Positions 10,294-64,000 of a stretch of DNA of 64,000 nt are shown here, in pieces. Numbering within the stretch: the first letter of the stretch is position 1; each line of letters starts with the position of its first letter. The stretch lies in the IMG/VR virus record IMGVR_UViG_3300029267_004162, positions 198,651-262,650 of that record. One strand, given 5' to 3'. The notes below the pieces were generated by a model, which saw nothing but the letters and a program-made list of their open reading frames with translations, made no database searches and was not told the DNA's origin. The position numbers were made by a program, and so were the translations under genes.

Positions 10294-10965
<672 letters not shown>

Positions 10966-16706: not shown

Positions 16707-19634
16707 TTGAGTTTATTGTTAATTTTAAAGTCGAGGTGTAACTTGGGGCTATTAAAATCTGGTCCTAAACAGATGGGGCAAAGGTCTGAGGGTAAAGGCT
16801 ATAAAAGACAGGGGCGGGGTGGATTCCGTGGTGGCAGAGAAAACCCCTGGAATACTCCTTACCCCAAAGTTGATCTGACCAAATCCGGAAGGAAGCTCTA
16901 TCGAGAAAACCGACCCCGCCCAGCCAGGGACCCTGGTCGATTGGCGGGGGCACGCAACCCCAATATTCCAGCAGAATTCTATGCTCTTCCCGAGGAGTGT
17001 GTTACTACCATTATGTTTGTTGGTGACGCACCTGGGAAAGATGATGATTTAGCTAACCGAGTATTCCATGGTAGGGCAGGTCATTTACTTCGGTTCTGTA
17101 TCGAAAATTCCGATCAATCGGCTTATAACATCTATTTGACTAATGTAGTCAACACGATGCCGCCTATCGTAGAACACAATCCTGAGATTCCCACCGAGGA
17201 ATCTATTGAAAGTAACCGAGAGGCCCTACAACATGAGATCGAATTAGTAAGGCCCCGAGTTATCATAGCTCTTGGTCAAATAGCCGTGTCAGCCCTTATT
17301 GATGAAGAAGAGGGGGACAGGCTGGTTAACAAACGGGGGAATTTCTATCCGTGTAAATTTGACCCCGCTATTCGGGTTATGGCGACTTGGTCTCCTTCCA
17401 TGATTGTGAGGAACCCTCATCGGGGATCACAGTTGTTCCTTGACATAACAAAGGCATCAGCAAACACGGCCTTTGACATCTCTAAGATGAGAGAGCAGCC
17501 GGAGGTGAAGTGGGCTAAGACTTTGCCAGAACTACGAGAGGCTGTGGCAGAAGCATCCAAGGCCAAAGTCATGGCGTTTGACTTTGAAACAACCGGTCTA
17601 TCGAGGTGTCCGGGGGATAACGCCATAGTATCCCTGCATTGGTCAACCAATAGCACTGATTGTTGGGGAGTTCTGGTTGATCACCCGGATGCGGGGTGGA
17701 CGAAAAAACAGAAACCCAAAGTACGTCGTTTGCTCAAGGATCTCCTTCGAAACAAAGTTCCCAAAATCGCTCACAACGCCAAGTTTGACTTAGCCATCGC
17801 TCGGGGGTGTCTTGGAATTAGGGTGGCTCAATTCCAGTTCGATACTATGATTATGCAGTATCTTCTGGATGAGAATATTAACGACAAAACGCGGTCGGGT
17901 GGCCCCCCCATGTTTCGGTCTTCGCTAGACGCGATGGTCCAGTATTGGCTCGACTTTGTTGACCCAGATTGGGAAGCGGCAAAGGAACACCGCAGCAGTC
18001 TGATTCGGGTTCCAGGGAAGGATGTGATCTGGTATGGTTCTAAAGACGCCTGCTACACCCTACGTCTGTACAAACTACTGCGGAAGCTAATCGCTGCAAA
18101 AGACTCTGGTCTTCTCAAAACACCAATGGAGATCATGGCCAAACTGTCCTATTCCGTCTCAGAATTAGAGTCGGCTGGTCTGCCCTTTGATATGGATTTG
18201 GCTACAAAGCTTCTGGGTACAAGATGGGAAAACTCGCTTTCGAATCTCATCAACCGCCAAAGAGCGGATCTGTTCACAGATTCCAAAGTTGCCAAATTTA
18301 ACGAGCAGCTTAACGACGAGCAAGTCAAACCCACTCTGTTCAAAGTGTTAGACGACGAAAACGAACAACTGTTTGACCCAATGAAAACCCAGAAACACTT
18401 GGTCCCTTTCTATTATGAATTCCTGCGGTTGCAGCCCCCACCAGGAGCAGAAGAGGGAAAATTCCCCACTGGTAAGGATTTTGAAGAACACTACGGGGAA
18501 ATAGAAGTCGTTCGACAGATTAAGGAATACAAACAGGCCCACAAAATGCGGGGGTTCATCGAGAGTTTTGTGGACGCCGCTGCGATGAATACAGACGAAC
18601 GAATAAGGGCGTCTTTTCGCATTAACTCCACGGTTACTGGCCGGTTGTCTTGTACTGATCCTAATTTGCAACAGATACCGCGTGCTGAAAACGAGATTAA
18701 AACCTGGATAAAACGAATTGTGGCCGTTCCACCGGGGTGGGTTCTCATAGCAGCAGATTACTCGACTGCTGAAGTGAGAATTGGGGCCATAACGAGTAAA
18801 GATGATAAGATGGCTGCTGTGTTTAGGGCCATTAGTAAATTAAAGGCGAAATTCCGTAAGAAGCCCACCGCGAAATTATACGAGCGCATTTTTGTGGATG
18901 GGGAAGGCGACGCCCACAAACAGAATTATTCGCGGGTGTTTGGTATCCCGGTTGGTGAGGTTACCAAAGATCAGCGTACTGAAGCCAAGGGGATTACATT
19001 TGGTTGCATGTTCTCCGGTACCCCCGAGCACCAAATGGCTGGGAAACTTGGCATTCCAGTAGAAGAAGCTAAGATAAAGGTAGATGCTTTCCTTGGTCCC
19101 TTCATTAATCTAACCAAATTCCTCAAGCAGAATAACGCGGCCGCTGACAATGTGGGATTCGTGTACAGCTTGTTTGGACGTCGTCGAACTACGTATGGTG
19201 CGTGGTCTATCAAGAGTGAGCATACTCACGCCCGCAATCAATGTCAAAACTCTGGGATCCAGTCTACTGCCAGTGACGTTCAAATGCTAGCCGTGTATAA
19301 ATTCTGGCAGTACGTTTACACTCATGAAAAGGTTTGGCGAGCCGTTAACGTAGTCCATGACTCCATCTATTTTGTCGTTCCCAGAACAGAACTGAGAGAT
19401 GCTGTTGAGGTAATCGAAGATGTCATGCTCGATCCAGGGTTGGATCGGTACGGGATCGATAAAGAGTTTACGCCCTTGGAAGTGGACATGGAGATTGGTC
19501 TAAACGCCGCTGATACCATCACCTGGGATTTTACTACCCAGCACATGGATTTGATCGAAAAGTGGCTAGACGCTGGGGCTGATCGGGAGTGTAAACCAAA
19601 GAGTCCATTTGCTAAAAAGAAGAAGGAAGGTTGA
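16707..19634 (+). CDS. family A DNA polymerase with N-terminal uracil-DNA-glycosylase-like domain and 3'-5' exonuclease
   Basis: UDG-like FVGDAPG..D....F.G.AG; Exo motifs DFETTG, HNAKFD, YGSKDA; Pol motifs TGRLS..PNLQQIP, DYSTAEVR, R..AK...FG, VHDS. True start may be the internal ATG (MGQRSEG). Confidence 0.95.
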   Translation: MSLLLILKSRCNLGLLKSGPKQMGQRSEGKGYKRQGRGGFRGGRENPWNTPYPKVDLTKSGRKLYRENRPRPARDPGRLAGARNPNIPAEFYALPEECVTTIMFVGDAPGKDDDLANRVFHGRAGHLLRFCIENSDQSAYNIYLTNVVNTMPPIVEHNPEIPTEESIESNREALQHEIELVRPRVIIALGQIAVSALIDEEEGDRLVNKRGNFYPCKFDPAIRVMATWSPSMIVRNPHRGSQLFLDITKASANTAFDISKMREQPEVKWAKTLPELREAVAEASKAKVMAFDFETTGLSRCPGDNAIVSLHWSTNSTDCWGVLVDHPDAGWTKKQKPKVRRLLKDLLRNKVPKIAHNAKFDLAIARGCLGIRVAQFQFDTMIMQYLLDENINDKTRSGGPPMFRSSLDAMVQYWLDFVDPDWEAAKEHRSSLIRVPGKDVIWYGSKDACYTLRLYKLLRKLIAAKDSGLLKTPMEIMAKLSYSVSELESAGLPFDMDLATKLLGTRWENSLSNLINRQRADLFTDSKVAKFNEQLNDEQVKPTLFKVLDDENEQLFDPMKTQKHLVPFYYEFLRLQPPPGAEEGKFPTGKDFEEHYGEIEVVRQIKEYKQAHKMRGFIESFVDAAAMNTDERIRASFRINSTVTGRLSCTDPNLQQIPRAENEIKTWIKRIVAVPPGWVLIAADYSTAEVRIGAITSKDDKMAAVFRAISKLKAKFRKKPTAKLYERIFVDGEGDAHKQNYSRVFGIPVGEVTKDQRTEAKGITFGCMFSGTPEHQMAGKLGIPVEEAKIKVDAFLGPFINLTKFLKQNNAAADNVGFVYSLFGRRRTTYGAWSIKSEHTHARNQCQNSGIQSTASDVQMLAVYKFWQYVYTHEKVWRAVNVVHDSIYFVVPRTELRDAVEVIEDVMLDPGLDRYGIDKEFTPLEVDMEIGLNAADTITWDFTTQHMDLIEKWLDAGADRECKPKSPFAKKKKEG

Positions 19635-20478: not shown

Positions 20479-20985
20479 GTGATCACATATTTGGACATGG
20501 ATGGCGTTATCGTTGACTTCAACAAGGGGGTATCGGATAAGTTTGGAGTAGATGTTACGGACGCGGACACCAGGGCTTTACATAAATTGATTGGGGTTAG
20601 TTCCACCCTTTTTTGGAAAACCCTCAATGAATCCAGTACGTGGTGGGCAGAGTTGGAACCCTATCCATGGTTGGAAGAACTAGTGGATTTGATCGAAAAA
20701 CGGGGTTCATGGTATCTTTGTACCGCTGCTGCCTCTCTTGCTGCTCTTCATGGCAGAGTTAGATGGATTAAGAGGATCTTCGGTTCTCAGTTTGATCGGT
20801 TTGTTTTTACTCGGCACAAACATCTGTTAGCTCGACCCCACACATTGCTGATTGATGACACGCCAAAACAGGTAGAGGATTTCAGTAGCGAAGAGGGGGC
20901 TAGAGCTGTGCTTTTTCCTCAGCCCTGGAATCAGGCCACTTATGACATCTCGGAATTTATGGATGTTTTGAGGGTAAGTCAATGA
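20479..20985 (+). CDS. 5'(3')-deoxyribonucleotidase, HAD family
   Basis: LDMDGVIVDF (DxD), KHLL and LLIDD motifs. Confidence 0.88.
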   Translation: MITYLDMDGVIVDFNKGVSDKFGVDVTDADTRALHKLIGVSSTLFWKTLNESSTWWAELEPYPWLEELVDLIEKRGSWYLCTAAASLAALHGRVRWIKRIFGSQFDRFVFTRHKHLLARPHTLLIDDTPKQVEDFSSEEGARAVLFPQPWNQATYDISEFMDVLRVSQ

Positions 20986-23060: not shown

Positions 23061-23133
23061 AGGACCGTAGCTCAGTGTGCAGAGCACCGCCCTCTTAAGG
23101 CGGGGGTCGCAGGTTCAAATCCTGCCGGTCCTA
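23061..23133 (+). tRNA. tRNA-Lys(CUU)
   Basis: AGGACCG/CGGTCCT, GCTC/GAGC, CCGCC-CTCTTAA-GGCGG, GCAGG-TTCAAAT-CCTGC; D-loop lacks the GG; no encoded CCA. Confidence 0.93.
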
Positions 23134-24690
23134 TTTGGGGTCATACGTCTTCTGGGGAATGTCATCCTGCGGTCTTGTCAAAATTGTAATGCCTCATTTG
23201 ATATTTCTGAAGCCGAGGTGGCTCGGGGGAGGGGGAAGTATTGTTCTCAAGCGTGTTATAAAGAGTCCTTCTTAGAGGAGAGGCTTTGTCAATGTGGAAC
23301 AAAGTTTAAAACCAAAAAGGGGAAACGGGGTCGTAAAACTTGTTCTAATCGGTGTGCAAAATCCAGAGTATTGAGCGAAGAAACTCGCGATAAAATTAGC
23401 AACACCTTATCTCGAGGAGAGCATCAGAAGAAGAGGGGGAAATACACCAAAAAATGTCACCGCTGTAAAACCTTATTCGAAACATACTCTTCTAAGAGCC
23501 GTCTTTGTGGGAGTTGTAAGCAATCTAAAAAATGCAAGGTCTGCAACCGGGATTTGGTCCAAAAAGAGTGCGTGTGGTGTAAAAAAGCAGTTAGCCAAAA
23601 GCCCTTACCTAAGCGGTGCCGCAATAAACGAGGGGCCAAGCTGTTGGTAGAAATCTTGAATCTAACTCAGGACAATAACCAACAGCTCTGTGAAGACTTG
23701 GGCGTGGATTTCGTAGTGGGGAAATTGGCTATTGAATACCAGAACCCAAAGTATCCCTATTCCACAGACAACGACCACGAGGATCAGTTGATGTCGCGGG
23801 GGTTTGTTCCTCATCCGATTAGTTGGAGTTTGGAGGGGGAACCTGATTCGAAAGAGCGTTTGCGGCTGGAAGCCGATATCATTGATTTTTGTGCGGCCAA
23901 CGATAATCCGTTTGTATTCACATACGACAAAATCGCTTTTCAAGACCAATACGCCCGTTTACAAAAGACTACTTCCCTTAAAGGCTTCTGCTATTGTAGA
24001 ACGGCCATGGAGTGGTACCACAAACATCTGTGGACAATGAAGACGTCCAGAGCCGAAGTTGATCCCATATCCTATTGGCGGTGCAACCCGGCGAAAATAA
24101 CCGCCAATAGAATAAAATACGCCAATTTGTCTCCAACTTCCCTACGTCGCTATTTTAAGCTTTTTGACATGGTTCCAACCATGTTCCAGGATTCATTAGG
24201 TAAGCGAATGGCCCTCATGGTTGACGGGCCGGAGATAGTGGACCCCTTTGCTGGTTTTGGTGGTCGAATGTTGGGGGCTTGTGCTATTGGGAAGACATAC
24301 ACTGGATTCGACATCAACCCCTGGACTTGTAGTGCTAACGTTATCATGGCTAAGGAAATGGGGCTAACCGGCGTACGTATTCATCACGCTGATTCTTCTC
24401 AGATGGATCCCGTTGAATGTGACGGAGTAATTACTAGTCCGCCTTTCTTCAACAAGGACGAATACGGGGATGGGGGCTATGATTCGCTTGAGCAATATCA
24501 ACGCGCGATTCATGAGACGTTCAAGCGAATCACTCTCCGGGACAAGGCCATCTTGGATTTCAAGCCGGTTCAGGGGTGTTCTTTAGATGATTTTGTCGCG
24601 GCCCTGCCGTATCGGGTCCAGAAGATAGAAGAAGTGAATTTCGGGGGGTTGGGCCGTAAATCTATACACCACTGGGTGGTGGCCTGCTAG
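23077..24690 (+). CDS. multidomain protein: Cys-rich Zn-finger repeats, NUMOD3-like motif, putative PD-(D/E)XK nuclease and amino-methyltransferase
   Basis: CxxC..F..CSxxC repeats; LSEETRDKISNTL; DFVVGKLAIEYQ; VDPFAGFGGRMLGA, FDINP, ITSPPFFNKDEY. The track start overlaps the tRNA, so the real start must be after 23133. Confidence 0.75.
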   Translation: MQSTALLRRGSQVQILPVLFGVIRLLGNVILRSCQNCNASFDISEAEVARGRGKYCSQACYKESFLEERLCQCGTKFKTKKGKRGRKTCSNRCAKSRVLSEETRDKISNTLSRGEHQKKRGKYTKKCHRCKTLFETYSSKSRLCGSCKQSKKCKVCNRDLVQKECVWCKKAVSQKPLPKRCRNKRGAKLLVEILNLTQDNNQQLCEDLGVDFVVGKLAIEYQNPKYPYSTDNDHEDQLMSRGFVPHPISWSLEGEPDSKERLRLEADIIDFCAANDNPFVFTYDKIAFQDQYARLQKTTSLKGFCYCRTAMEWYHKHLWTMKTSRAEVDPISYWRCNPAKITANRIKYANLSPTSLRRYFKLFDMVPTMFQDSLGKRMALMVDGPEIVDPFAGFGGRMLGACAIGKTYTGFDINPWTCSANVIMAKEMGLTGVRIHHADSSQMDPVECDGVITSPPFFNKDEYGDGGYDSLEQYQRAIHETFKRITLRDKAILDFKPVQGCSLDDFVAALPYRVQKIEEVNFGGLGRKSIHHWVVAC

Positions 24691-28984: not shown

Positions 28985-29503
28985 GTGACTGCCGCGAGAG
29001 TGATTCCGGGGAAAGCAGTCGATGTGTTAATTGCCAACAGCCGACGCGGACTCGTCCAACCTGCACCAGGCGACCTGGCGGAATCCGAGACCGCGTATGG
29101 TCGGGGGTACCAAGACGGAATGCGAGACCTGGCAATGAAGATTTTAACGATTGCTAATCCAGCTAAGGACTGGAGAGTAATGGCTGAGGTTGTAATGGTT
29201 TGTGTAGCTGACTCCTGTAAGAATCGGGGCGAGGCCAGCGAGGAAACTAACTGTCCGTTGTGTAGCAGAGAGATGATACAAATCCCTCGGACTTTTTATG
29301 ACGCGATCCATCACTCGACCCCACCCACCAAGGGTGTAACCGCAGAGACAGAGAAATTGCGGCAGATCAAGGAAGCGTGGGAGGCATCACGTGAGGCAGG
29401 CAAGCGAAGGGCAACCCACAACGCGGAATGTACTACTCATCGTCCCAGGACAGAGTTGGCGGGCGTGTTGCAGGAGATATTCGCCCCTGTCTCATCAGAT
29501 TAG
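28985..29503 (+). CDS. hypothetical protein
   Basis: 172 aa; AY.RGYQDG motif and a CPLC. Confidence 0.55.
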   Translation: MTAARVIPGKAVDVLIANSRRGLVQPAPGDLAESETAYGRGYQDGMRDLAMKILTIANPAKDWRVMAEVVMVCVADSCKNRGEASEETNCPLCSREMIQIPRTFYDAIHHSTPPTKGVTAETEKLRQIKEAWEASREAGKRRATHNAECTTHRPRTELAGVLQEIFAPVSSD

Positions 29504-29514
29504 GAGACGTGGAA

Positions 29515-30060
29515 ATGGTTCCGAATCAACTCTTCTTCACTCGTGGGGTGGGTAAGCACCACCACCCCCTGGAATCTTTTGAGGCTGCGTTGCGCGATGC
29601 GGGGGTTGCATTGTGCAATTTGGTGAAAGTATCGAGCATCTATCCACCTGGATGTAAGATCATCTCACGCCGAGCTGGGTTGGCGAAGCTCGTTCCCGGT
29701 CAAATAACCTATTGTGTTTTGGCTGAAACTCGTACCAACGAGCCCAATCGATTGGTTTCTGCCGGCATAGGACTTGCTGTACCCGCCAAGGGGGATCAGT
29801 ATGGTTACATTTCCGAGCATCACGGGTATGGACTCACCAAACTCAAGACGGCTGATTTCGTTGAGGACATGGCTGCTAGTATGTTGGCAACTACGCTTGG
29901 CATAGAGTTCAACGCCGACAGTGACTATGATGAACGCCGCGAAGTCTACAAGATGAGTGGTCAGATTGTCAAAACACGCGCCGTTGTGCAATCCACCGAG
30001 GGCGATAAGAATGGTAAATGGACCACAGTTGTGGCTGCGGCCGTCTTCCTTTTTGAATAA
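29515..30060 (+). CDS. pyruvoyl-dependent arginine decarboxylase
   Basis: MVPNQLFFTRGVG.H...LESFEAALRDAG....NLVKVSSIYPP (Ser-Ser autocleavage site), YGYISEHH, WTTVVAAAV. Confidence 0.9.
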   Translation: MVPNQLFFTRGVGKHHHPLESFEAALRDAGVALCNLVKVSSIYPPGCKIISRRAGLAKLVPGQITYCVLAETRTNEPNRLVSAGIGLAVPAKGDQYGYISEHHGYGLTKLKTADFVEDMAASMLATTLGIEFNADSDYDERREVYKMSGQIVKTRAVVQSTEGDKNGKWTTVVAAAVFLFE

Positions 30061-31020: not shown

Positions 31021-31443
31021 GTGGATAGGGTTTCTGGTATGTATACTGGATGTAGTGTGAAGAACACTCTCTGTACGAATAATGAGTGTACTTTTTGCGG
31101 GGTTTGTTGTATCGCATTCCCCATCAAGAGTCTGGGAAAAGACTCCTTGACGGTCTGCACACATCTATATTGGGGGGATGGGGGATTCCGCTGTGATGAT
31201 TATGAGAATAGACCCCCGGAGTGTCGCGCTTTTCAGCCTTGTGTGGTTGGTGCGATGCGCGTGCTGGATTCACTTCTTTGCCAAATCGATCTTTGGTCCG
31301 ATGAAGTGTGGGTCACCCTGATGACTGGGATTAAAGCGGGTGGTGGATTGGATGTGAACCACCCGGAACTGCACCCCCTAATAGAACACTTTGATGCAAC
31401 CCAAATCAAACGGAAAGACAGGTTCCAAGAATTGACTAGATAG
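31021..31443 (+). CDS. YkgJ-family Cys-cluster (putative Fe-S) protein
   Basis: CTFCGVCC...CTHL...C..YENRPPECRAF. Confidence 0.8.
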   Translation: MDRVSGMYTGCSVKNTLCTNNECTFCGVCCIAFPIKSLGKDSLTVCTHLYWGDGGFRCDDYENRPPECRAFQPCVVGAMRVLDSLLCQIDLWSDEVWVTLMTGIKAGGGLDVNHPELHPLIEHFDATQIKRKDRFQELTR

Positions 31444-49054: not shown

Positions 49055-49705
49055 ATGACAGGGCCAAAACAAGTTACTTGCAGTATTTGCGGAGAAACTG
49101 TCTTCAAGGCTCGGACTGCTCATGTAGGAAATGGTGAGCGGGCTTGTAAAGAACATGAGGGGGTAGTTGACAAAGCTAATCAGGTTCAGATCCAACAGCA
49201 AGAAACACTTCGGAAATCAAGAAAGCCAAAGACGAAGCCGGATCGAACACGGGACTTCAAGAAGGAACTGGTATGCATGACTTGCGGCCAAGAGAGTGTA
49301 AAGGTTTCTGACATTCTTTCCGAAGTCCTGGTAATAAGTAAGAAAATGGAGATGGGGGGTGAACCCATTAACCTGTTACTTAACCCCGCTAAGGTAATAA
49401 ATGAAGCTAGAAAGTCTTTTGGCGAAAAGAAGCCCATGTACGTTTTCACGAAGGATGAATTAACTGCAGACCAGTGGCAGAGGGTTAAGAAGAATGCTGG
49501 TCACCTTCGAGAAGTTCTCGACCTCTTTGGGGTTATCGGGGTATGTGTAGAGTGTTGTACGAAACTGGATCTCCCCGATAAACTGCAACAAATTGAACAA
49601 CCTTCTTTAGAGACCTTATCGTTAATGGGGGCCATGATGGAAGAACCCTTCAGGCAAGAGGTGGAGCGGAGAGCGGAGGCGGAGGCGGAGGCGGAGGCGG
49701 ACTAA
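49055..49705 (+). CDS. hypothetical Zn-finger protein
   Basis: CSIC...C..H, CMTC, CVEC. Confidence 0.6.
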   Translation: MTGPKQVTCSICGETVFKARTAHVGNGERACKEHEGVVDKANQVQIQQQETLRKSRKPKTKPDRTRDFKKELVCMTCGQESVKVSDILSEVLVISKKMEMGGEPINLLLNPAKVINEARKSFGEKKPMYVFTKDELTADQWQRVKKNAGHLREVLDLFGVIGVCVECCTKLDLPDKLQQIEQPSLETLSLMGAMMEEPFRQEVERRAEAEAEAEAD

Positions 49706-49708
49706 TAT

Positions 49709-50107
49709 ATGCCTACGATGCCCAAATCTTGGCGAGGTAAGCCTCTTAGGACCCCAATAGGGCGTGTCTTAGAAATAGCTATTGAAGAGGCCCTGAAGAG
49801 CGAAGTTAAACGATCCAAGCACAGTGCTTTAGGTTTAGACAGTCGGTTAAGGAATGTTCTTTCTAGGACTCATAACACACGAGTTTTTGGTTACAAGAAC
49901 AAATGGACTCTTCATGCCGAAGAACGGCTGCTAGCAAAGATCAGAGAACCACTCCACACCATGTTAATATGCCGGGTTATGGGAAATCGGTCTTTTGGTA
50001 ACAGCAAACCATGTCCAAGGTGTATGCAATTACTCCAGGAATCGGGAGTAAAACGAGTGATTTTTTGGCAAGGTGGGGTTTGGACCAGTCTTCTTTTACT
50101 TCGTTAA
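49709..50107 (+). CDS. cytidine/deoxycytidylate-deaminase-like protein
   Basis: HAEE...SKPCPRC...GVKRVIF. Confidence 0.8.
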   Translation: MPTMPKSWRGKPLRTPIGRVLEIAIEEALKSEVKRSKHSALGLDSRLRNVLSRTHNTRVFGYKNKWTLHAEERLLAKIREPLHTMLICRVMGNRSFGNSKPCPRCMQLLQESGVKRVIFWQGGVWTSLLLLR

Positions 50108-50993: not shown

Positions 50994-51536
50994 ATGGAAA
51001 CAAGGCTAACAGAAGTTGAGGAACAGGTTCAAAATTTACGCGATCAAGTGTTAACGCTCTCAAGAAAACTGAATCGGGTGGATCGGAAGGCTACCGGAAA
51101 GAAGAGTGGTAGGGGTGTTGTGCTTGATATCACTGTTGAAGAACTGCAAAATCATATTCAGCAATTGGCTGAGAAATCGTCTCTAACTGATAGATATTTG
51201 AGGTATCATGAGTATCTGCCAGTTGAAGAAGTCCCCAAATGGCAAGTTGAAGAGCAAGTTACGGCTAAGAAAGAGATAACAAAACTGGCCAACCGCCATC
51301 GATTAGCCACTAAACTCCCATATACCGCAGAACAATTGGCTGCAATGCCCATTAAGGATTTAGTATCAGTTATGGGCTTAGTCGGTAGTAACCCCTTCAA
51401 TTGTAAACCAGCTAATCGCATTAAAGAGGTGCTTGGCCTTCAAGATGCGTTTGACTTTGAGAAATGGGAAAAATCTGTTTTTGAAGTCGAGTGGGAAGAG
51501 GAAGAGGACGAGGACGAGGACGAGGAAGAATCGTGA
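50994..51536 (+). CDS. hypothetical protein with coiled coil and acidic tail
   Basis: 180 aa ending EEEEDEDEDEEES. Confidence 0.65.
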   Translation: METRLTEVEEQVQNLRDQVLTLSRKLNRVDRKATGKKSGRGVVLDITVEELQNHIQQLAEKSSLTDRYLRYHEYLPVEEVPKWQVEEQVTAKKEITKLANRHRLATKLPYTAEQLAAMPIKDLVSVMGLVGSNPFNCKPANRIKEVLGLQDAFDFEKWEKSVFEVEWEEEEDEDEDEEES

Positions 51537-51805
51537 TACCACGCCATCCAGTATCAAAAGTAGAATTCAACGCGGTATTGGATAGATTTGCGGCTATTTT
51601 GGGGGGATCGCAAGCTCTAGGGATTGAACCTTCAATGAATGCCGTTGTACGTGCGACTAAAATCATAATAAAGCTATGGATATCAGGGGTTCAAAGTCGC
51701 TGGGAAGATGAGGAGATTTTGAAGGAGCAGATAGGATTTTTACAAGATGAACCGGGCCATTTCGTATTCGTGGAAGGGGGTAGTCATGCCACCACCAGTT
51801 TATGA
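51533..51805 (+). CDS. hypothetical protein
   Basis: GTG overlaps the upstream stop; MIPRHPVSKVEF... Confidence 0.45.
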   Translation: MIPRHPVSKVEFNAVLDRFAAILGGSQALGIEPSMNAVVRATKIIIKLWISGVQSRWEDEEILKEQIGFLQDEPGHFVFVEGGSHATTSL

Positions 51806-52715
51806 ACCGGAGCATTGGGATGAAAGTCTTTGGGGAGAAGAGGATCATCCACCACCCACGATTCCACAGTTGGGAGCAATAGGCCCAGGAGTAAAGGGAT
51901 ACCAGAAGTTGGACTTCGGGGATGACCTGTGCCAAGGAGAATGTACTTGTTGTATTCTTCAACCTATCCTTACTTCAACCGAAGCGAACCATTTTACTCG
52001 TAAAGTCTCTCTTACAGAGAACTTGTGGAAGGCTCCAGTTGATTGCCCCCATTTAACTGGGGCGACGGCTGCTTGTACTGGATGCAGTGCTGGAGTGCTG
52101 AAGCCTATAGATTGTGAATGTTATCCTTTAGTTCCTCAACCTTCTGGGATCGTAGCTGATCCGGGTTGTCCTCAAGCTTGGCGTGCGGCTAAAATGTTCT
52201 ACAAGGAATGGCCCAGTCGCCGGCTAGTGAAGAGCGTGATCAGTTGTATCCAATGGGCGAATCTCCCCGAATTTGCTGAATACGCCCAATTTCACGCTGA
52301 CTTGGAAAAAGAGGAATACACCCCCTTCTCTCCCTCGTTACCCTGGTATGAAGCCGCTGCCTTTGTGAGGTATTTTACTTCGCCAGGAAAAAGAGTGCTT
52401 CTCCCTGAAATTCCGGGCAAGCGCAGTCAAGATTTGAAACACCCTGTTCTTAGTCGTTGCCCAGTATGGGTAGTAGAAAATGGGTGGGCTCAACTCTGGT
52501 GGACCGAATTGGAAGACACCATTTATCAAGCGTATCTACCATCGGGGTGGACCGGAGCTTGTTCCCTGGAAGAATTGCAGGGCTACATAAAAGATGACCC
52601 CTTTATCTCGGGATTGGAAACTGGTACTCTTGATTCGGGAGTAGAGAAGCTAGTAACCGGGCGAATTGGCGCGGCTATTCAGGATATGGACCAAGGTCTG
52701 GGTTTGATTTCTTAA
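51747..52715 (+). CDS. YkgJ-like CxxxCxCC (putative Fe-S) protein with C-terminal extension
   Basis: CQGECTCC...CPHL...C...KPIDCECYPL; likely start at MPPPVY. Confidence 0.6.
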   Translation: MNRAISYSWKGVVMPPPVYEPEHWDESLWGEEDHPPPTIPQLGAIGPGVKGYQKLDFGDDLCQGECTCCILQPILTSTEANHFTRKVSLTENLWKAPVDCPHLTGATAACTGCSAGVLKPIDCECYPLVPQPSGIVADPGCPQAWRAAKMFYKEWPSRRLVKSVISCIQWANLPEFAEYAQFHADLEKEEYTPFSPSLPWYEAAAFVRYFTSPGKRVLLPEIPGKRSQDLKHPVLSRCPVWVVENGWAQLWWTELEDTIYQAYLPSGWTGACSLEELQGYIKDDPFISGLETGTLDSGVEKLVTGRIGAAIQDMDQGLGLIS

Positions 52716-52721
52716 CAGGAC

Positions 52722-54353
52722 ATGTCAATGCGAGTTATCACCATTGAGGATTATCACAAAAATTGGCTAGGGTCTGATGACTATCGCTATTGGATACACC
52801 AGTCCTGTGAAGATTTGGGATACTACGATGGTGAAGAAGTTAGACCGGAGCATGACCCTGATGTTCTAACTCGATTAATTCGACGAGAAATGACGTGGCT
52901 TAAATCAAAACGCACCAAAGCCATTTTGGTTGAGCTTGATCACCGATGTCACGCTGTTTTATGTACTGAGGGGTGGTTTGAAGAGAGGAAATGGGAACCG
53001 TCGGGTTATTACATGGTAGCTGGTTTTTTACCGACGTGTACACCTGATGTATTAGCTCATCCTGAAGTGATAAAACACATTCCCGTTCCGTTTGAAACAT
53101 GGGGTCAGTCTCCATTTTGGCGGTTGCACGACGAATCCCTTCCTATTCCTACTGATAAATGGGGATTGGTAAAGATACCAGAGTCTTGGGATGTGTACCT
53201 TACGACTGTAAAAAAGAAAGCTCGCCAAACTATCCGGAAACTGTTAAAGGCTAATTCCGGTTTGAAATTTGAGGGTGTTTCTTTTGATACAGCAAAAGAA
53301 GCTTATCTGGGCATGCGGGATGTTTTTAAAGCTCGTTGGACATACGGGGAAAGTTCTAAAGCGAACGCGTTTTCCGTTTATGAAACCGGGTTATTAGAAT
53401 ATTTGCCTGGAATGCAATACCATTTGGTTCTAGATGGAAACGACGGAGACAGGGTTCTTGGTGTCAACACCTCATTGACCAATATTCTTCATAATTGTCT
53501 TTGTGACCACGCTTTTATCCGGGATTTAGACCATCCCGTTATGACTGATAACAAAAGATACGTTGGGAGTTGGGTCGTTTGTAAGATGATCCAATTGGCG
53601 ATCACAAAACAATTTGAGTGGTACGACCCAGGTTATGGAGAAGAAGCAGGGGCCGCATATAAACGGAAGTTTAACAACCATCACACCACATACCCAGTAT
53701 TTAGCATTTTTCCTTCGTGGGAAAACGTACCCTTAATTTATTTTCTTCCCGTTTGTGTGGAAGGAAAATTTTATCTGGGCGATCGGACGACTACTTTTGC
53801 AGAAAAACTGCTTGAAACCCGAGAAAGGTTCTGTGACAGAGTCTCTCCCGAGGTGCGGAGCCGATTGTTATTCAGCAACGCGCGATCTGATTCGTCGATT
53901 CCCACCAAAACGCAGACGGCCTATCGACACACTTATCAAAACCACTTCAGGGAGATAGTGGATTTCGTAAAAACCCTATATTGCACAGGAAAGCTGGATT
54001 TTGAAACGGATTTCGTAATCCATCTGGGTTGTCGGGATGGTCAAGCGGTTATGGAATTGCGAGCTTGTGGAATAGAAGCTTATGGGATGGATTTACCCGA
54101 ATGGCTAGCCATGGGTACTCCGGAATTCATCAGAGAATTCGCTTTGGACGGAGATTGGAAAATGGATCCGATCTCAGCGCCCGTTCTCTTGTGCTGGGAT
54201 TTAGCCGAAGAGAAGAACATGGAGATCATTAAGGCTGTGGGACAAAGGGTTGTTTCTCATTTGGTTACCTTCTATGACGATATTGATCAGTTAGTAGCCC
54301 CATTAACTGATTGTGGTCTGGTACGAGGTGATGGGATATGGACCGTCAAATAG
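52722..54353 (+). CDS. Fem/CelD-like tandem GNAT (Acetyltransf_6-type) fused to a class I methyltransferase-like domain
   Basis: WDVYLTTVKKKARQTIRK...GSWVV.KMIQ.A...YDPGYG...YKRKF; C-terminal VIHLGCRDG....G.EAYGMD. Confidence 0.65.
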   Translation: MSMRVITIEDYHKNWLGSDDYRYWIHQSCEDLGYYDGEEVRPEHDPDVLTRLIRREMTWLKSKRTKAILVELDHRCHAVLCTEGWFEERKWEPSGYYMVAGFLPTCTPDVLAHPEVIKHIPVPFETWGQSPFWRLHDESLPIPTDKWGLVKIPESWDVYLTTVKKKARQTIRKLLKANSGLKFEGVSFDTAKEAYLGMRDVFKARWTYGESSKANAFSVYETGLLEYLPGMQYHLVLDGNDGDRVLGVNTSLTNILHNCLCDHAFIRDLDHPVMTDNKRYVGSWVVCKMIQLAITKQFEWYDPGYGEEAGAAYKRKFNNHHTTYPVFSIFPSWENVPLIYFLPVCVEGKFYLGDRTTTFAEKLLETRERFCDRVSPEVRSRLLFSNARSDSSIPTKTQTAYRHTYQNHFREIVDFVKTLYCTGKLDFETDFVIHLGCRDGQAVMELRACGIEAYGMDLPEWLAMGTPEFIREFALDGDWKMDPISAPVLLCWDLAEEKNMEIIKAVGQRVVSHLVTFYDDIDQLVAPLTDCGLVRGDGIWTVK

Positions 54354-54976
54354 ACAAGCGATTTGAACAAGCCTATTTTGATACCTATTGCGATGGGAAA
54401 CCCTACTATAAAACTCTCTCCGCTCATTTGTTTGGCTTTAATTGGTTGGTTTTTTATCTGTGTCTAGCTTTTAATAAACCGAAAGAGGACATGGTAAATT
54501 GGCTTCGTGGAAAGTCACTGCTGGATGCAGGATGCGCCTTTGGTCATGTTGTCCATGATTTCTCAGAAGCCGGGGTTCTCGCTTGCGGGTATGATTGTGC
54601 TGAGTACGCCATTACCAATAGCCTCCCCTCAGTACAAGAAGACGTTTGGTTGGGTGACTCGGTTGATGTACTTCCTAACTTTCGGGAGAATTCATTCGAT
54701 ATCGTTTTCTCCAACAGTTTTCAATACGCTCGTTCTGATGAAGAACTGGCTTTGTTTCTAAGTGAATCCCAAAGAATAAGTCGCTACTTCACCTTCATCA
54801 TTACGGCTACTCCTGACTCCGAAGACCATGGTAGACCCTTAGCTAATGATACTCCATATTCCGTCTGGATTAGTCGAGCGGAATGGGAAAAGAAACTGAA
54901 AGACGCGGGTTTCCAAGAGGTTATTTTTGTTGACCTTTTACCATTTGCGGCTTTCAACCAGATTCCGGAGGTGTAG
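54338..54976 (+). CDS. class I SAM-dependent methyltransferase
   Basis: LLDAGCAFG, GYDCAEYAI, SFDIV. Confidence 0.85.
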   Translation: MDRQIDKRFEQAYFDTYCDGKPYYKTLSAHLFGFNWLVFYLCLAFNKPKEDMVNWLRGKSLLDAGCAFGHVVHDFSEAGVLACGYDCAEYAITNSLPSVQEDVWLGDSVDVLPNFRENSFDIVFSNSFQYARSDEELALFLSESQRISRYFTFIITATPDSEDHGRPLANDTPYSVWISRAEWEKKLKDAGFQEVIFVDLLPFAAFNQIPEV

Positions 54977-55943
54977 TTTGATTTCGGATGGGGTGCTTAC
55001 TTCAATAAGACCTGATCTATCAGGGGTTAAACGAGCGACCGATTTGTTGACCTATGATATTGCTGGGGAGGAACACCTTGCCCGTCCATTGTATCTTGTT
55101 CATTGGTCCGGGGTGTATCCAGTTTCGCAATTTCTGGGGGTGTTGTCTCTCCCTAGTGCAAGATTAATAGATTACTTTTTGGACAACATCCACGCTCTAA
55201 ATAGTTTAGTTAGCATCGCCAAAAGAAACAGTTTGGATTATTCTTTCGTCTATCAGCCTCTTTCTGTTGACGACACCCCTGTTCGTCATAATGAGGGGGA
55301 TGAGGGAGACAAGTTCCGTCATTGGTATTTCCCTGCTCTCGGTTGGGAAACGTATCTAACATCCAGGGTTTCTAAAACTAGAAAGAAAATCCGGAGGTAC
55401 ATACGAGCGGCTGTGGGGTATGAAGTTCAGGTTTTTGTCAATCAATGGCCGGAGCCTCAACGACCTGTTGATGAAATGTGGGAATTATGTTTACAAAAAT
55501 ACCCCGATTCCTATGAAACGATGGCGGAGCGAGGAGAAATAGGTCATCTTCGTACGTATTTCTCAGCGATAATGGAGAGTGTTGGCACCAACACGCCTGT
55601 ATTCGCCTTCACTTTCTTATTCAAAGATGGCCAATTTGTCGCCGGGGGTTTAGTTCATTACATGACTGTCTTTGGGGAAAAATGGGGGCAATTGATTTTG
55701 GCGATCAGTAAATTTGCTGAGTACCCTGATTCAGGGAACGTTTTAGTTAGTTTGATGTTAAAACAAATTTTAGACGGGGGTTTCGGTGTTCATTACCAAA
55801 CCGACGATTTACCTTGGAAAGAAACGTTGTGGGGTATGTATCCTTTACCCGTGTTTAATATGTGTACTGAACCTGGGTACACAGCCCTTATTGAAGGTAG
55901 AGAAGTAGAATCGTGGGATTATTCCATTAAGGAATATGTGTAA
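54927..55943 (+). CDS. Fem/CelD-like GNAT (Acetyltransf_6-type), paralogous to 52722
   Basis: WETYLTSRVSKTRKKIRR...FKDGQFVAG...SGNVLV.LML....G...WK..W. Confidence 0.6.
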   Translation: MLTFYHLRLSTRFRRCSLISDGVLTSIRPDLSGVKRATDLLTYDIAGEEHLARPLYLVHWSGVYPVSQFLGVLSLPSARLIDYFLDNIHALNSLVSIAKRNSLDYSFVYQPLSVDDTPVRHNEGDEGDKFRHWYFPALGWETYLTSRVSKTRKKIRRYIRAAVGYEVQVFVNQWPEPQRPVDEMWELCLQKYPDSYETMAERGEIGHLRTYFSAIMESVGTNTPVFAFTFLFKDGQFVAGGLVHYMTVFGEKWGQLILAISKFAEYPDSGNVLVSLMLKQILDGGFGVHYQTDDLPWKETLWGMYPLPVFNMCTEPGYTALIEGREVESWDYSIKEYV

Positions 55944-56422
55944 TGCTTCTTCAAGCTACTATTAACGATACACCGGTAGTTGAAAGGCTTGAGAGGGCAG
56001 CCTTTCGAGCCCAATATCATGAACCCGAGAAATATATCAAAAGAATCCTGACCAAGTCAGGATTCGGATGGATTTATCTACAGAGATATGGGGGGTTTAC
56101 TCTTCCTTCGTATCCAGCTTCTCCCTGGGGGGCGGTTGGGTATGTCTTGGGTGAATTTCGATCTGTTAAAAAGGCTCCTGTTTGTCAATTGTTCTCAATA
56201 GGAATCCTCAAATCTTATCGAAATGAGGGTATCGCAGATGAATTGATGAATAAGTTTGAGGAGTCCGCGAGAAAAGAAACGGAAGACATGGTTCTCCAGG
56301 TCAATGTTAAGAACATCGCTGCTCTTAGGATGTATCAAAAGAGAGGATACGTGGTTGACCGATACTTGCCCGATTTTTATTCTGGGGGCGAACACGCTCA
56401 TCAAATGCGTTTGATCCGCTGA
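55943..56422 (+). CDS. RimI-like GNAT acetyltransferase
   Basis: SIGILKSYRNEGIA, LQVNVKNIAALRMYQKRGY......FY..GEHA..M. Confidence 0.88.
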   Translation: MLLQATINDTPVVERLERAAFRAQYHEPEKYIKRILTKSGFGWIYLQRYGGFTLPSYPASPWGAVGYVLGEFRSVKKAPVCQLFSIGILKSYRNEGIADELMNKFEESARKETEDMVLQVNVKNIAALRMYQKRGYVVDRYLPDFYSGGEHAHQMRLIR

Positions 56423-56469: not shown

Positions 56470-56886
56470 GTGATAACCCAGAAAGACGACCTAGCCAAGC
56501 AAATTACTGCCCTCACCCCCATGGGTGATTCCCAAGAAGTTGATTCCGTCAATCTACCTGCTGTTATTGATGGGATATGGGGTAATGTAGAAACTTTGGT
56601 TGAGAAGTGGAAGGCAGACAAACCTGACGGTGTCATGGGCTTTACTTCTTTTATCTTTGATTCAACCGCTGAACTGATGGGCCTCTTTGATGATGTAACG
56701 GCTTTTATTGGTGTGGAAGATCGAAAGATTTTGGTTGCGGATACCGTTCGCTACATCTACGGGAAGGTTGATCCTGACCTGCCGTGGATTCCAGAGCCTT
56801 TTGAGTCCAAGTTGGAAGCTTATATCATGGACAATATTTGGCCTGCCGTTGTGAATGTACTCTTTGCTCGTTTTGCTAAGAAATAA
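56470..56886 (+). CDS. hypothetical protein
   Basis: 138 aa; GGAG RBS. Confidence 0.65.
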   Translation: MITQKDDLAKQITALTPMGDSQEVDSVNLPAVIDGIWGNVETLVEKWKADKPDGVMGFTSFIFDSTAELMGLFDDVTAFIGVEDRKILVADTVRYIYGKVDPDLPWIPEPFESKLEAYIMDNIWPAVVNVLFARFAKK

Positions 56887-59166: not shown

Positions 59167-60045
59167 ATGAACACGCTGACGGTTGTCGAGAGGGTGGAAG
59201 CTTTGTGTCAAGATGTCTGCCACCGCCCACAACATGTCTTTATAGCAGAACCAGATCTAGACTTAATTGAACAACTACGCAAAGTAGAGGAGTCGCCTAA
59301 GCAAGACCCGTTTCCTACTTCGATGACTTCTTCTGATGATAAGCTTTTGTTTTGGGTATTCTACGAGTTGTTGGCTGGATCGGTCAACTATTGTTATTGG
59401 GTAGGAAAATCTGAGGTTCGTCCTGGAGGTAGTAGAGCCAGTAAAATGTACGCTTTACTGGATCAGATTTTCGTGGAGGCTCGACAGGACAATACTTCCA
59501 AAAGCCGTATCATTTCGTCTTTTAACCAGGTACTACTAAAGGAAGGCTTTCCTCTTGTAGAGAAGAGATGTCGTCATACCCAAGAAATTACTCCCGAACT
59601 ATGCCAACATGTCTATGAATGTCTGCAACGAGGGGCCTGGGACAACTGCCTTCAAGCTGTCATCACGGCTTGCCCAGGATACGCAGACGATCCTTTTCTG
59701 AAAAGATTGTTCCTGGTCTTCATGCAACTCCACCGTAGGACAAGTCAATTTACTGATATGATGCGGTCTCACGTTCTGGTTCCCGCCGATTATCACGTGC
59801 CCAAGGTGTTGAGGGCTTTGAAAATACTCAGTTACTCAGATGAATTAGGCCATTTGGTGGCGAATTCAATGCCAATTCCATCCGGTTCTTCAATGGAGTG
59901 TGAAATTCGGGCCTCAACTATCTTAGCTTGTCAGCAGTTAGCACTTCAGGCTGGAGTATCGGTGGAACAAGTTGATCGATATTTATGGTATAACAAGTCC
60001 CGATATTCGGCCAATTTTCATCTAACGGTTACCTCGCACTATTAG
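59167..60045 (+). CDS. queuosine-salvage glycosylase/hydrolase-like protein (DUF2419/QNG1 family)
   Basis: NYCYW, DPFLKR, PADYHVPKVLRAL.ILSYS..L...GSSMECEIRASTI.AC...VDRYLW. Confidence 0.8.
   Translation: MNTLTVVERVEALCQDVCHRPQHVFIAEPDLDLIEQLRKVEESPKQDPFPTSMTSSDDKLLFWVFYELLAGSVNYCYWVGKSEVRPGGSRASKMYALLDQIFVEARQDNTSKSRIISSFNQVLLKEGFPLVEKRCRHTQEITPELCQHVYECLQRGAWDNCLQAVITACPGYADDPFLKRLFLVFMQLHRRTSQFTDMMRSHVLVPADYHVPKVLRALKILSYSDELGHLVANSMPIPSGSSMECEIRASTILACQQLALQAGVSVEQVDRYLWYNKSRYSANFHLTVTSHY

Positions 60046-63056: not shown

Positions 63057-64000
<944 letters not shown>

What the first reader, a model, noticed from the sequence alone, without database searches (positions are those of the whole stretch)
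51747..56422. Five-gene Fe-S / tandem-GNAT / methyltransferase cassette: candidate undescribed modification pathway
Seen: five contiguous, mostly overlapping ORFs encode a YkgJ-like Cys-cluster protein, a Fem/CelD-type GNAT fused to a methyltransferase-like domain, a stand-alone class I methyltransferase, a second paralogous Fem/CelD-type GNAT and a RimI-like GNAT. Known: Fem/Acetyltransf_6 folds transfer acyl or aminoacyl groups (often from aa-tRNA or acyl carriers), and GNAT folds occur in phage DNA-modification systems such as Mom. Inference: three acyltransferases, two methyltransferase domains and an Fe-S protein in one phage operon look like an assembly line. It could decorate a DNA base, a tRNA, a polyamine or a virion/host glycan. 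Possible feeders elsewhere in the window are arginine decarboxylase (agmatine), QueD, a QNG1-like hydrolase, a second YkgJ protein and an orphan methyltransferase at 26702. I do not recognise this combination as a described phage system.
Basis: partly seen in the sequence, partly recalled or inferred. Interest (0 to 1): 0.82.

Follow-up and report, generated by a model that had tools for sequence, protein, structure and literature searches.

The report
Orphan acyl- and methyl-transferase gene cluster
Five tightly packed genes of an uncultured 262-kb phage encode very divergent acyl/aminoacyl-transferase, methyltransferase and cysteine-cluster proteins that probably work together to decorate some amine-bearing molecule, but they have no detectable relatives anywhere, so the target remains a guess.

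Summary
The likely starts are 51786, 52728, 54338, 54978 (TTG) and 55943. Two family calls pass curated HMM cut-offs: O3 is a class I SAM methyltransferase and O5 is a GNAT closest to N-alpha protein acetyltransferases. The other three rest on weaker evidence. O4 gets FemAB_like at E 0.004, below the cut-off. The Fem/CelD fold of O2's N-terminal part and of O4, and the YkgJ-like fold of O1, rest on language-model and ESMFold similarity plus short motifs. My AlphaFold2 models failed.

O1-O4 have no sequence relatives in 5.8 billion proteins, IMG/VR or GenBank phages; O4 also had none in an exhaustive 1.84-billion-protein HMMER scan. All assemblies of this phage are identical here.

The best argument for a pathway is internal. 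O2 fuses a Fem-like domain to a methyltransferase-like domain, and the next two genes encode the same two folds separately.

The same genome encodes PurZ, FolE, QueD and QueE, and DpdM (a preQ1 methyltransferase) is YkgJ-like. A nucleobase target is therefore plausible but unproven. O1-O4 are acidic, unlike the window's DNA enzymes. Interest is moderate.

The parts
51786..52715 (+). O1, 309 aa. N-terminal YkgJ/DpdM-like cysteine-cluster region (Cys49-x3-Cys53-x-Cys55-Cys56, then Cys87/97/100/110/112/128) plus a C-terminal extension of about 170 aa with unknown fold.
   Evidence: ORF and start. No Pfam, PHROG or PDB hit. ESM Atlas neighbours are CxxCxxCC clusters, mostly viral (0.87; TM by row 0.61). 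Cys map. No similarity to phiSM DpdM or to the window's second YkgJ-like ORF.
52728..54353 (+). O2, 541 aa. Residues about 1-345 are Fem/CelD (Acetyltransf_6)-like. Residues about 400-541 are class I methyltransferase-like, with motif I VIHLGCRDG at residue 430.
   Evidence: ORF. No HMM hit for the N-terminal part; Methyltransf_23 at E 0.22 for the C-terminal part. Atlas structure neighbours are all Acetyltransf_6/FemAB (TM 0.41-0.53 by query, up to 0.66 by row), and feature neighbours are GNAT+methyltransferase fusions. Motif shared with O4 and with O3. AF2 model unusable, pLDDT 34.
54338..54976 (+). O3, 212 aa, stand-alone class I SAM-dependent methyltransferase (motif I LLDAGCAFG).
   Evidence: Methyltransf_11 at 1.1e-5, above the cut-off. 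phrog_27380 methyltransferase. Weak hit to the DVU_1556 family. Motif. No homologue in the 5.8-billion-protein set.
54978..55943 (+). O4, 321 aa (TTG start), Fem/CelD (Acetyltransf_6/FemAB_like)-type two-domain acyl/aminoacyl-transferase.
   Evidence: FemAB_like at E 0.004, below the cut-off. Atlas features 0.94-0.96 to Acetyltransf_6/BioF2-like clusters, including a viral one; structure TM 0.54-0.60. SD GGAGGTG before the TTG. No homologue in an exhaustive phmmer scan of 1.84 billion proteins. AF2 model unusable.
55943..56422 (+). O5, 159 aa, GNAT acetyltransferase of the N-alpha (RimI/Ard1/Naa) type, with acetyl-CoA motif RNEGIA.
   Evidence: Acetyltransf_1 at 7e-11. TIGR01575 rimI at 4e-11, below the cut-off. 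The best PDB matches are all N-terminal acetyltransferases. Motif and pI 9.4.
51533..51805 (+). Unassigned 90-aa ORF that overlaps the start of O1. It may be co-transcribed, but its membership in the cluster is unknown.
   Evidence: Called in public assemblies. No family hit.
56470..56886 (+). Unassigned 138-aa acidic ORF between O5 and peptide deformylase. Its membership in the cluster is unknown.

Best explanation
O2, O3 and O4, probably together with O5 and O1, form one co-expressed tailoring module that decorates an amine-bearing acceptor.

Inferred steps:
1. The two Fem/CelD-type transferases (the O2 N-terminal domain and O4) each transfer an acyl or aminoacyl group from an activated ester. 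Aminoacyl-tRNA is the typical donor for this fold.
2. The N-alpha-type GNAT O5 acetylates the free alpha-amine so created.
3. The two class I methyltransferase domains (the O2 C-terminal domain and O3) add methyl groups.
4. O1 is a metal-binding YkgJ/DpdM-like protein that acts as a further modifying or methyl-handling component.

My preferred acceptor is a non-canonical purine made by this same phage: a 7-deazaguanine derivative or 2-aminoadenine. It would more likely be modified as a free base or nucleotide than in duplex DNA.

Shown: the genes, two of the family assignments, the domain fusion, and the genomic context. Inferred: every catalytic step, the donor and the acceptor.
For: - Internal linkage. 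O2 fuses a Fem-like and a methyltransferase-like domain, and O3 and O4 encode the same two folds as neighbouring genes. The O2 N-terminal part against O4 gives z=4.2 and the O2 C-terminal part against O3 gives z=3.9. Atlas neighbours of O2 are recurrent bacterial GNAT/Acetyltransf_6+methyltransferase fusions.
- Fold support for O4 and the N-terminal part of O2.
- O3 and O5 pass Pfam cut-offs, and their cofactor motifs are intact. O5's closest solved relatives acetylate alpha-amines.
- The genes have translationally coupled junctions and good Shine-Dalgarno sites.
- Context. The cluster sits in the DNA/nucleotide-metabolism arm of the genome. The genome encodes QueD with CxxxHGH, QueE (phrog_2076 at 9e-47; PDB QueE at 2e-10), FolE and a PurZ homologue (2e-59 to phiVC8 PurZ).
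- Precedents. DpdM, the phage preQ1 N-methyltransferase, is YkgJ/DUF3109-like with a similar Cys motif. Mom is a GNAT that uses Gly-tRNA to modify DNA.
Against: - No homologues exist, so there is no co-conservation, no covariation and no characterised relative.
- HMM support is absent for O1 and the O2 N-terminal part, and sub-threshold for O4. The AF2 models failed.
- O1-O4 have pI 4.6-5.7, whereas the window's DNA enzymes have pI 8.5-9.6.
- There is no similarity to Mom-containing GenBank phages or to phiSM DpdM.
- No DpdA, QueC or QueF was found in about 124 of 262 kb.
- The deazaguanine genes are scattered around the genome, so this phage does not obviously cluster its pathways.
- Tight co-directional packing is the rule across 25 kb here.
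Confidence: 0.3

Rival explanations
1. There is no common pathway. The five genes are independent accessory enzymes that merely lie next to each other in a long co-directional phage gene array. Examples would be a host-protein acetyltransferase, a stray methyltransferase and two fast-evolving Fem-fold proteins.
For: The whole stretch 38.8-63 kb is tightly packed on one strand and mixes helicase, ClpP, primase, NDK, RecA, deaminase, deformylase, a tRNA and Q_salvage. This genome scatters the genes of one clear pathway, FolE/QueD/QueE, over more than 50 kb. GNATs and methyltransferases are common single genes in jumbo phages. There is no co-conservation evidence.
Against: The O2 domain fusion, mirrored by the O3+O4 pair, is hard to explain by chance. 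All five consecutive genes are predicted group-transfer or cofactor proteins, while most neighbouring genes have no assignment.
Confidence: 0.28
2. The cluster modifies proteins or peptides at their N-termini, or the translation apparatus. Fem-fold enzymes would add amino acids from aa-tRNA, as L/F-transferase does, and O5 would acetylate alpha-amines. They would act alongside the adjacent peptide deformylase to reshape N-terminal processing or N-degron fate during infection.
For: The best PDB matches of O5 are exclusively N-terminal protein acetyltransferases and RimI. Peptide deformylase lies 530 nt downstream, followed by tRNA-Gln. A phage ClpP is in the window. Jumbo-phage GNATs related to ribosomal-protein GNATs have been proposed to hijack translation. 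An acidic pI is unproblematic for protein substrates.
Against: Nothing links O1, O3 or the methyltransferase domain of O2 to this role. Fem/CelD-like folds have many non-protein acceptors. The deformylase is separated from the cluster by an unassigned ORF and is a common stand-alone phage gene.
Confidence: 0.15
3. The cluster modifies cell-envelope precursors or a small metabolite. This is the classical Fem/CelD role: aminoacylation or acylation of peptidoglycan, lipid or exopolysaccharide precursors. Alternatively it tailors a polyamine such as agmatine, which the phage's pyruvoyl arginine decarboxylase would make.
For: Atlas neighbours of O4 and O2 are FemAB, PEP-CTERM-associated FemAB, LPG_synthase_C and Mig-14 clusters. 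PvlArgDC is present at 3e-57. The proteins are acidic and soluble, with no transmembrane segments.
Against: The arginine decarboxylase is 22 kb away. There are no glycosyltransferase, flippase or membrane-associated genes nearby. The cluster sits in a nucleic-acid-metabolism arm.
Confidence: 0.15

Closest known systems
FemX/FemABX and the Acetyltransf_6 (CelD/BioF2-like, FemAB_like) branch of the GNAT superfamily
   Same: The N-terminal part of O2 (about 345 aa) and O4 (321 aa) have the right length for the two-lobed fold. They share the W-x-YL...K-R..IR motif region, and their nearest predicted-structure and embedding neighbours are all from these families.
   Different: The sequence signal is below Pfam cut-offs or absent. 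The setting is a phage, one copy is fused to a methyltransferase-like domain, and donor and acceptor are unknown.
DpdM, the YkgJ/DUF3109-like preQ1 N-methyltransferase of phage 7-deazaguanine DNA modification (10.1101/2023.04.13.536721)
   Same: O1 has a comparable N-terminal Cys motif (CxxxCxCC, against CxxxCxxCC in phiSM and C45/C50/C52/C53 in VH7D) with further downstream cysteines. The phage encodes FolE, QueD and QueE.
   Different: There is no detectable sequence similarity to phiSM DpdM. O1 has an extra C-terminal region of about 170 aa. No DpdA, QueC or QueF has been found so far, so preQ1, DpdM's substrate, may not be made at all.
Mom of phage Mu (a GNAT that transfers glycine from Gly-tRNA to N6 of adenine in DNA; PMC13219725)
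   Same: It is a phage-encoded GNAT-superfamily enzyme for which an aminoacyl-tRNA donor and a nucleobase acceptor are established. This gives a mechanistic precedent for what Fem-fold enzymes could do here.
   Different: Mom is a single stand-alone enzyme. tblastn of O2 and O4 (E<=1) and O5 (E<=0.001) against GenBank phages found no Mom-like match. The residues essential in Mom (R111, S124) could not be mapped.
RimI / Ard1 / Naa N-alpha-acetyltransferases
   Same: O5 passes the GNAT cut-off, has the R-x-x-G-x-A acetyl-CoA motif, and its 26 best solved relatives are nearly all N-terminal acetyltransferases.
   Different: It scores below the RimI equivalog cut-off (43 against 86 bits) and has no phage or cellular close homologue.
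Thymidine and cytosine hypermodification gene clusters of phages (PMC8989533 and related)
   Same: The concept is the same: several tailoring enzymes (acetyl-, methyl- and amino-acid-adding) clustered in a phage that modifies its DNA.
   Different: I did not search specifically for the signature enzymes of those clusters (as I recall them: a 5-hmdU DNA kinase, aGPT-Pplase, TET/5mYOX dioxygenases, glycosyltransferases). The Pfam and PHROG assignments I obtained for the window ORFs I scanned and the walked loci named none of them.

Membership tests
Acetyltransf_6 / FemAB_like / FemAB (Pfam PF13480, PF04339, PF02388) | Profile-HMM score at or above the curated gathering threshold | tested here: not met
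   O4: FemAB_like 16.7 bits against 27 (E 0.004). O2 N-terminal part: no hit even at E<=10.
Acetyltransf_6 / FemAB_like / FemAB (Pfam PF13480, PF04339, PF02388) | Two-lobed GNAT-like fold of about 320-350 aa | tested here: inconclusive
   ESMFold models in the Atlas (pLDDT about 0.55) match only Acetyltransf_6/FemAB clusters. O4: TM 0.54-0.60. O2: TM 0.41-0.53 by query and up to 0.66 by row. My AF2 single-sequence models had pLDDT 34-36 and could not be used.
Acetyltransf_6 / FemAB_like / FemAB (Pfam PF13480, PF04339, PF02388) | Aminoacyl-tRNA (or acyl-carrier) dependent transfer to an amine acceptor | not testable with these tools
   This needs biochemistry.
Class I SAM-dependent methyltransferase | HMM above the cut-off, plus motif I (hh[DE]hGxGxG-like) and an acidic residue at the end of strand 2 | tested here: met
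   O3: Methyltransf_11 26.4 against 21.2 bits; LLDAGCAFG ... GYD.
Class I SAM-dependent methyltransferase | The same features, tested for the C-terminal domain of O2 | tested here: inconclusive
   Only Methyltransf_23 at E 0.22 and phrog_27380 at E 0.048. The motif VIHLGCRDG ... YGMD is present. It aligns with O3 motif I (z=3.9) and with a pelagiphage methyltransferase at E 0.1.
GNAT (Acetyltransf_1), N-alpha-acetyltransferase / RimI subgroup | GNAT HMM above the cut-off and the acetyl-CoA motif A | tested here: met
   O5: 42.8 against 20.7 bits; RNEGIA at residue 93.
GNAT (Acetyltransf_1), N-alpha-acetyltransferase / RimI subgroup | RimI equivalog score (TIGR01575) | tested here: not met
   43.2 bits against a cut-off of 86.4. 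O5 is RimI-like only.
YkgJ / CxxCxxCC (PF03692) and DUF3109 | HMM match and the CxxCxxCC motif followed by downstream C...C..Y..RP..C | tested here: not met
   O1 has no HMM hit at E<=10 and a variant motif, CxxxCxCC. Only Atlas similarity supports the call (0.87; TM by row 0.61). The window's other ORF, 31021-31443, has the canonical motif and scores E 0.047.
DpdM (preQ1/dPreQ1 methyltransferase) | Sequence similarity to validated DpdM proteins | tested here: not met
   phmmer with phiSM DpdM (L024 2466-3119) against all ORFs of the window and walked loci found nothing involving O1 or 31021-31443. tblastn of O1 against GenBank phages found nothing.
DpdM (preQ1/dPreQ1 methyltransferase) | Co-occurrence with DpdA and a preQ1 pathway (QueC, QueF) | tested here: inconclusive
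   FolE, QueD and QueE are present. No QueC or TGT signature motif and no phiSM DpdA/QueC/QueF match was found in the roughly 115 kb loaded at the time. The last 10 kb walked was checked only by precomputed Pfam, which showed neither. In all about 124 of 262 kb was read and the rest of the genome was not.

The most novel reading that the evidence does not exclude
This phage probably replaces A by 2-aminoadenine (PurZ) and makes 7-deazaguanine precursors (FolE/QueD/QueE). In the most novel reading, it uses this cassette to install a previously unknown aminoacyl/acyl-plus-methyl hypermodification on a purine. An example would be a tRNA-dependent aminoacylation of an exocyclic or side-chain amine, followed by capping through N-acetylation or methylation. 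That would extend the Mom and DpdM/DpdN precedents to a multi-enzyme purine hypermodification pathway.
Probability: 0.12. Interest if true: 0.85.

Novelty: new variant of a known kind. Interest (0 to 1): 0.45.

Why it matters
If the five genes act together on a nucleobase, they would define a new multi-step purine hypermodification, in a phage that already appears to carry two other kinds of non-canonical purine chemistry. That would be of interest for restriction and CRISPR evasion and for DNA-modifying enzyme tools. If they act on protein N-termini or envelope precursors, they would be an unusual host-takeover module. As it stands, the cluster is mainly a well-delimited target for expression and mass-spectrometry experiments. 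It is also an example of enzyme folds that diverge beyond the reach of sequence searches.

Tried and rejected
- Searches for relatives all returned only the phage itself or sub-threshold noise. These were the word-indexed search of 5.8 billion proteins for O2, O4 and O3; an exhaustive phmmer scan of 1.84 billion representatives for O4; IMG/VR scans with O1, O2, O4, the deformylase, two O2/O4 alignments and a back-translated motif pattern; blastn and tblastn against GenBank phages for the cassette, O1-O5, the second YkgJ-like ORF and Q_salvage; and phmmer against PDB for O1, O2 and O4.
- PADLOC gave nothing relevant.
- AlphaFold2 single-sequence models of O2 and O4 had pLDDT 34 and 36, so I did not run Foldseek on them.
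- Population variation for a selection test: every assembly is 100% identical over the cassette.
- Direct kinship of O1 with DpdM, or with the window's canonical YkgJ-like ORF, is rejected at the sequence level.
- The window's PTPS gene as DpdL is rejected. It keeps the QueD signature CxxxHGH.
- The genome walk for DpdA and QueC covered about 124 of 262 kb and found neither. Two look-ups were lost to wrong minus-strand coordinates.


Full report
**What is there.** Between 51747 and 56422 the plus strand carries five consecutive ORFs of 322, 543, 212, 338 and 159 codons.
- Shine-Dalgarno sequences and public gene calls place the starts at 51786 (O1, 309 aa), 52728 (O2, 541 aa), 54338 (O3, 212 aa), 54978 (O4, TTG, 321 aa) and 55943 (O5, 159 aa).
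- All five show the same GC-by-codon-position pattern as the window's polA and uvrD. None contains an in-frame stop.
- The junctions are a 12-nt gap, a 16-nt overlap, a 1-nt gap and a 1-nt overlap.
A 90-aa ORF overlaps the start of O1, and the stretch 38.8-63 kb is one tightly packed co-directional array. The promoter and terminator scans were at background level.

**What the proteins are.**
- O3 is a class I SAM methyltransferase. Methyltransf_11 scores above its cut-off and motif I is intact.
- O5 is a GNAT with an intact acetyl-CoA motif. Its best solved relatives are nearly all N-terminal protein acetyltransferases (Ard1, SSO0209, Naa10/20/30/60, RimI). It does not reach the RimI equivalog cut-off.
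- O4 has only a sub-threshold FemAB_like hit, E 0.004. Its ESM Atlas neighbours are uniformly Acetyltransf_6/FemAB/BioF2-like, with features up to 0.96 and TM 0.54-0.60.
- The N-terminal 345 residues or so of O2 have no HMM hit at all. The Atlas structure neighbours are again all Acetyltransf_6/FemAB. The whole-protein feature neighbours are bacterial GNAT- or Acetyltransf_6-methyltransferase fusions, but at scores (0.71-0.83) that the tool itself rates as leads only.
- The C-terminal part of O2 has a methyltransferase motif I (VIHLGCRDG) and marginal methyltransferase hits.
- O1 has no HMM hit. It carries CxxxCxCC plus nine more cysteines and an unassigned 170-residue C-terminal half. Its Atlas neighbours are CxxCxxCC clusters, many of them viral.
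- The similarity of the O2 N-terminal part to O4 (z=4.2) and of the O2 C-terminal part to O3 (z=3.9) is confined to family motifs. It shows a shared superfamily, not demonstrable recent paralogy.
- My two AlphaFold2 runs without alignments failed, with pLDDT 34 and 36. I did not do a Foldseek comparison.

**Orphan status.**
- O2, O3 and O4 have no relative in the 5.8-billion-protein collection.
- O4 has none in an exhaustive HMMER scan of 1.84 billion representatives.
- O1, O2 and O4 have none in IMG/VR.
- None of the five has a significant match in GenBank phages.
- The phage has been assembled at about 262.5 kb from several samples, once in a permuted form. All copies are identical across the cassette.

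**Context.**
- The window is the replication and nucleotide-metabolism arm of a jumbo phage. It holds PolA with UDG-like and exonuclease domains, UvrD, SNF2 and XPD-type helicases, primase, clamp, RecA, NDK, two deaminases, a nucleotidase, RNA ligase, a macro domain, ClpP and two tRNAs.
These are pyruvoyl arginine decarboxylase (3e-57), QueD, a Q_salvage/QNG1-like protein and a canonical YkgJ-like ORF at 31021-31443. The 'methyltransferase' at 26702 rests on a motif only.
- Walking the genome outside the window, I found QueE (phrog_2076 at 9e-47; PDB QueE at 2e-10). I also found FolE next to two phosphoribosyltransferases.
- A 353-aa protein outside the window has phiVC8 PurZ (2e-59) and S-2L PurZ (3e-40) as its best solved relatives, far ahead of cellular PurA.
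- The window's PTPS keeps the QueD signature CxxxHGH, so it is not DpdL.
- This phage therefore very probably makes 2-aminoadenine DNA and at least 7-carboxy-7-deazaguanine.
- I found no QueC, QueF or DpdA in the roughly 124 kb I could read. Divergent DpdA subfamilies would escape my single-sequence tests.

**How it most likely works.**
- The strongest evidence for a functional unit is internal. One polypeptide (O2) joins a Fem-like and a methyltransferase-like domain, and the next two genes encode the same two folds separately. Such fusions recur in bacteria.
- I therefore take O2-O4 as a coupled acyl/aminoacyl-transfer and methyl-transfer module. O5 is a likely alpha-amine-capping acetyltransferase and O1 a metal-cluster partner.
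- Literature gives two relevant precedents. DpdM, the phage preQ1 N-methyltransferase, is a YkgJ/DUF3109-like two-metal protein with a very similar Cys motif. Mom is a GNAT that uses Gly-tRNA to modify adenine in DNA.
- With the phage's own purine chemistry, a purine-derived acceptor is my preferred guess.
- The guess has clear weaknesses. O1 shows no sequence similarity to DpdM. No similarity to Mom-bearing phages was found. O1-O4 have pI 4.6-5.7, while the window's DNA-handling enzymes have pI 8.5-9.6 against a median of 6.5. This last point argues for a base, nucleotide, small-molecule or protein substrate rather than duplex DNA.

**Rivals.**
- The genes may be unrelated neighbours. This genome scatters FolE, QueD and QueE over more than 50 kb and packs unrelated genes tightly.
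- They may form a protein N-terminus or translation module. O5's relatives, the deformylase 530 nt downstream, tRNA-Gln, ClpP, and the proposal that jumbo-phage ribosomal-type GNATs hijack translation all point this way.
- They may play the classical Fem/CelD role on envelope precursors, or tailor a polyamine fed by arginine decarboxylase.

**Comparison and novelty.**
- Each protein is a very divergent member, or a fold-level look-alike, of a known superfamily.
- None meets the membership test for FemAB/Acetyltransf_6, YkgJ, DpdM or RimI proper. O3 and O5 meet those for class I methyltransferases and GNATs.
- I found no description of this gene combination.
- I rate it a new variant of a known kind, a phage tailoring-enzyme cluster. 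Its function is unknown and its interest is moderate.
- The genome around it, with PurZ plus FolE/QueD/QueE and an Acb2/Tad1-like gene, is at least as interesting as the cassette itself.

Noticed in passing
L023 10956-12017 (same phage genome, outside the window; JGI 3300017987 Ga0180431_10000012): A 353-aa adenylosuccinate-synthetase homologue has phiVC8 PurZ (6fm1/6fko, 2e-59) and S-2L PurZ (7odx, 3e-40) as its best solved relatives, far ahead of cellular PurA (<=2e-20). The phage probably has 2-aminoadenine (Z) DNA. DatZ and MazZ were not identified; a DCD/dUTPase lies about 4.5 kb away.
   Followed up: partly
L019 10888-11601 and 10446-10898; L022 16392-17006, 13298-14412; window 12291-12743: The 7-deazaguanine precursor genes are scattered over the genome. 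QueE (phrog_2076 at 9e-47) is overlapped upstream by another 150-aa GNAT. FolE lies next to two phosphoribosyltransferase genes. QueD has the CxxxHGH signature. No QueC, QueF or DpdA was seen in about 124 of 262 kb. That raises the possibility of CDG-level or nucleotide-level (PRTase) chemistry rather than the usual DpdA route.
   Followed up: partly
window 102-473 (-): A 123-aa ORF carries the precomputed Pfam family Acb2_Tad1_hairpin. It is a candidate anti-CBASS/anti-Thoeris nucleotide sponge.
   Followed up: no
window 59167-60045 (+): A Q_salvage (QNG1/DUF2419-like) protein (2e-16) is encoded by a phage. It has no tblastn match in GenBank phages, and its role beside a partial deazaguanine pathway is unexplained.
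   Followed up: partly
window 29428-30060 and 31021-31443 (+): A pyruvoyl-dependent arginine decarboxylase (3e-57) is followed 1 kb downstream by a canonical YkgJ-like ORF (CTFCGVCC; PF03692 at E 0.047). That ORF is unrelated in sequence to O1.
   Followed up: partly
window 23061-23133 and 23077-24690 (+): tRNA-Lys(CTT) overlaps the mechanical start of a 537-aa ORF with weak HNH and DNA-methyltransferase hits. The true start of the ORF, and any link to the tRNA, was not examined.
   Followed up: no
window 16707-19634 (+): The family A DNA polymerase carries an N-terminal UDG-superfamily domain and a 3'-5' exonuclease domain. Whether it is a DpoZ-type enzyme matching the PurZ gene was not tested.
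   Followed up: no
window 5663-6301 (-), 49709-50107 (+), 20479-20985 (+): There are two dCMP/cytidine-deaminase-family genes and an NT5C-type deoxynucleotidase. A dCTP deaminase/dUTPase lies outside the window (L023 16508-16948). Together they hint at remodelled pyrimidine pools as well.
   Followed up: no
window end (about 63943-64000) and L013 11179-12513: Several independent assemblies break at almost the same point inside a 444-aa gene, while one assembly is circularly permuted across it. This could be a genome terminus, a repeat or a recurrent assembly break.
   Followed up: no
window 49055-49705 and 50994-51536 (+): The ORFs just upstream of the cassette end in low-complexity acidic tails (AEAEAEAEAD; EEEEDEDEDEEES). 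The cassette proteins O1-O4 and the 138-aa ORF after O5 are also markedly acidic, although the proteome as a whole is not (median pI 6.5).
   Followed up: partly
window 10294-10965 region (L016 and L017 4706-5365): The only differences between assemblies in the parts compared were one 18-nt indel (a 219-aa against a 213-aa product) and a single mismatch. Otherwise the assemblies are 100% identical.
   Followed up: no
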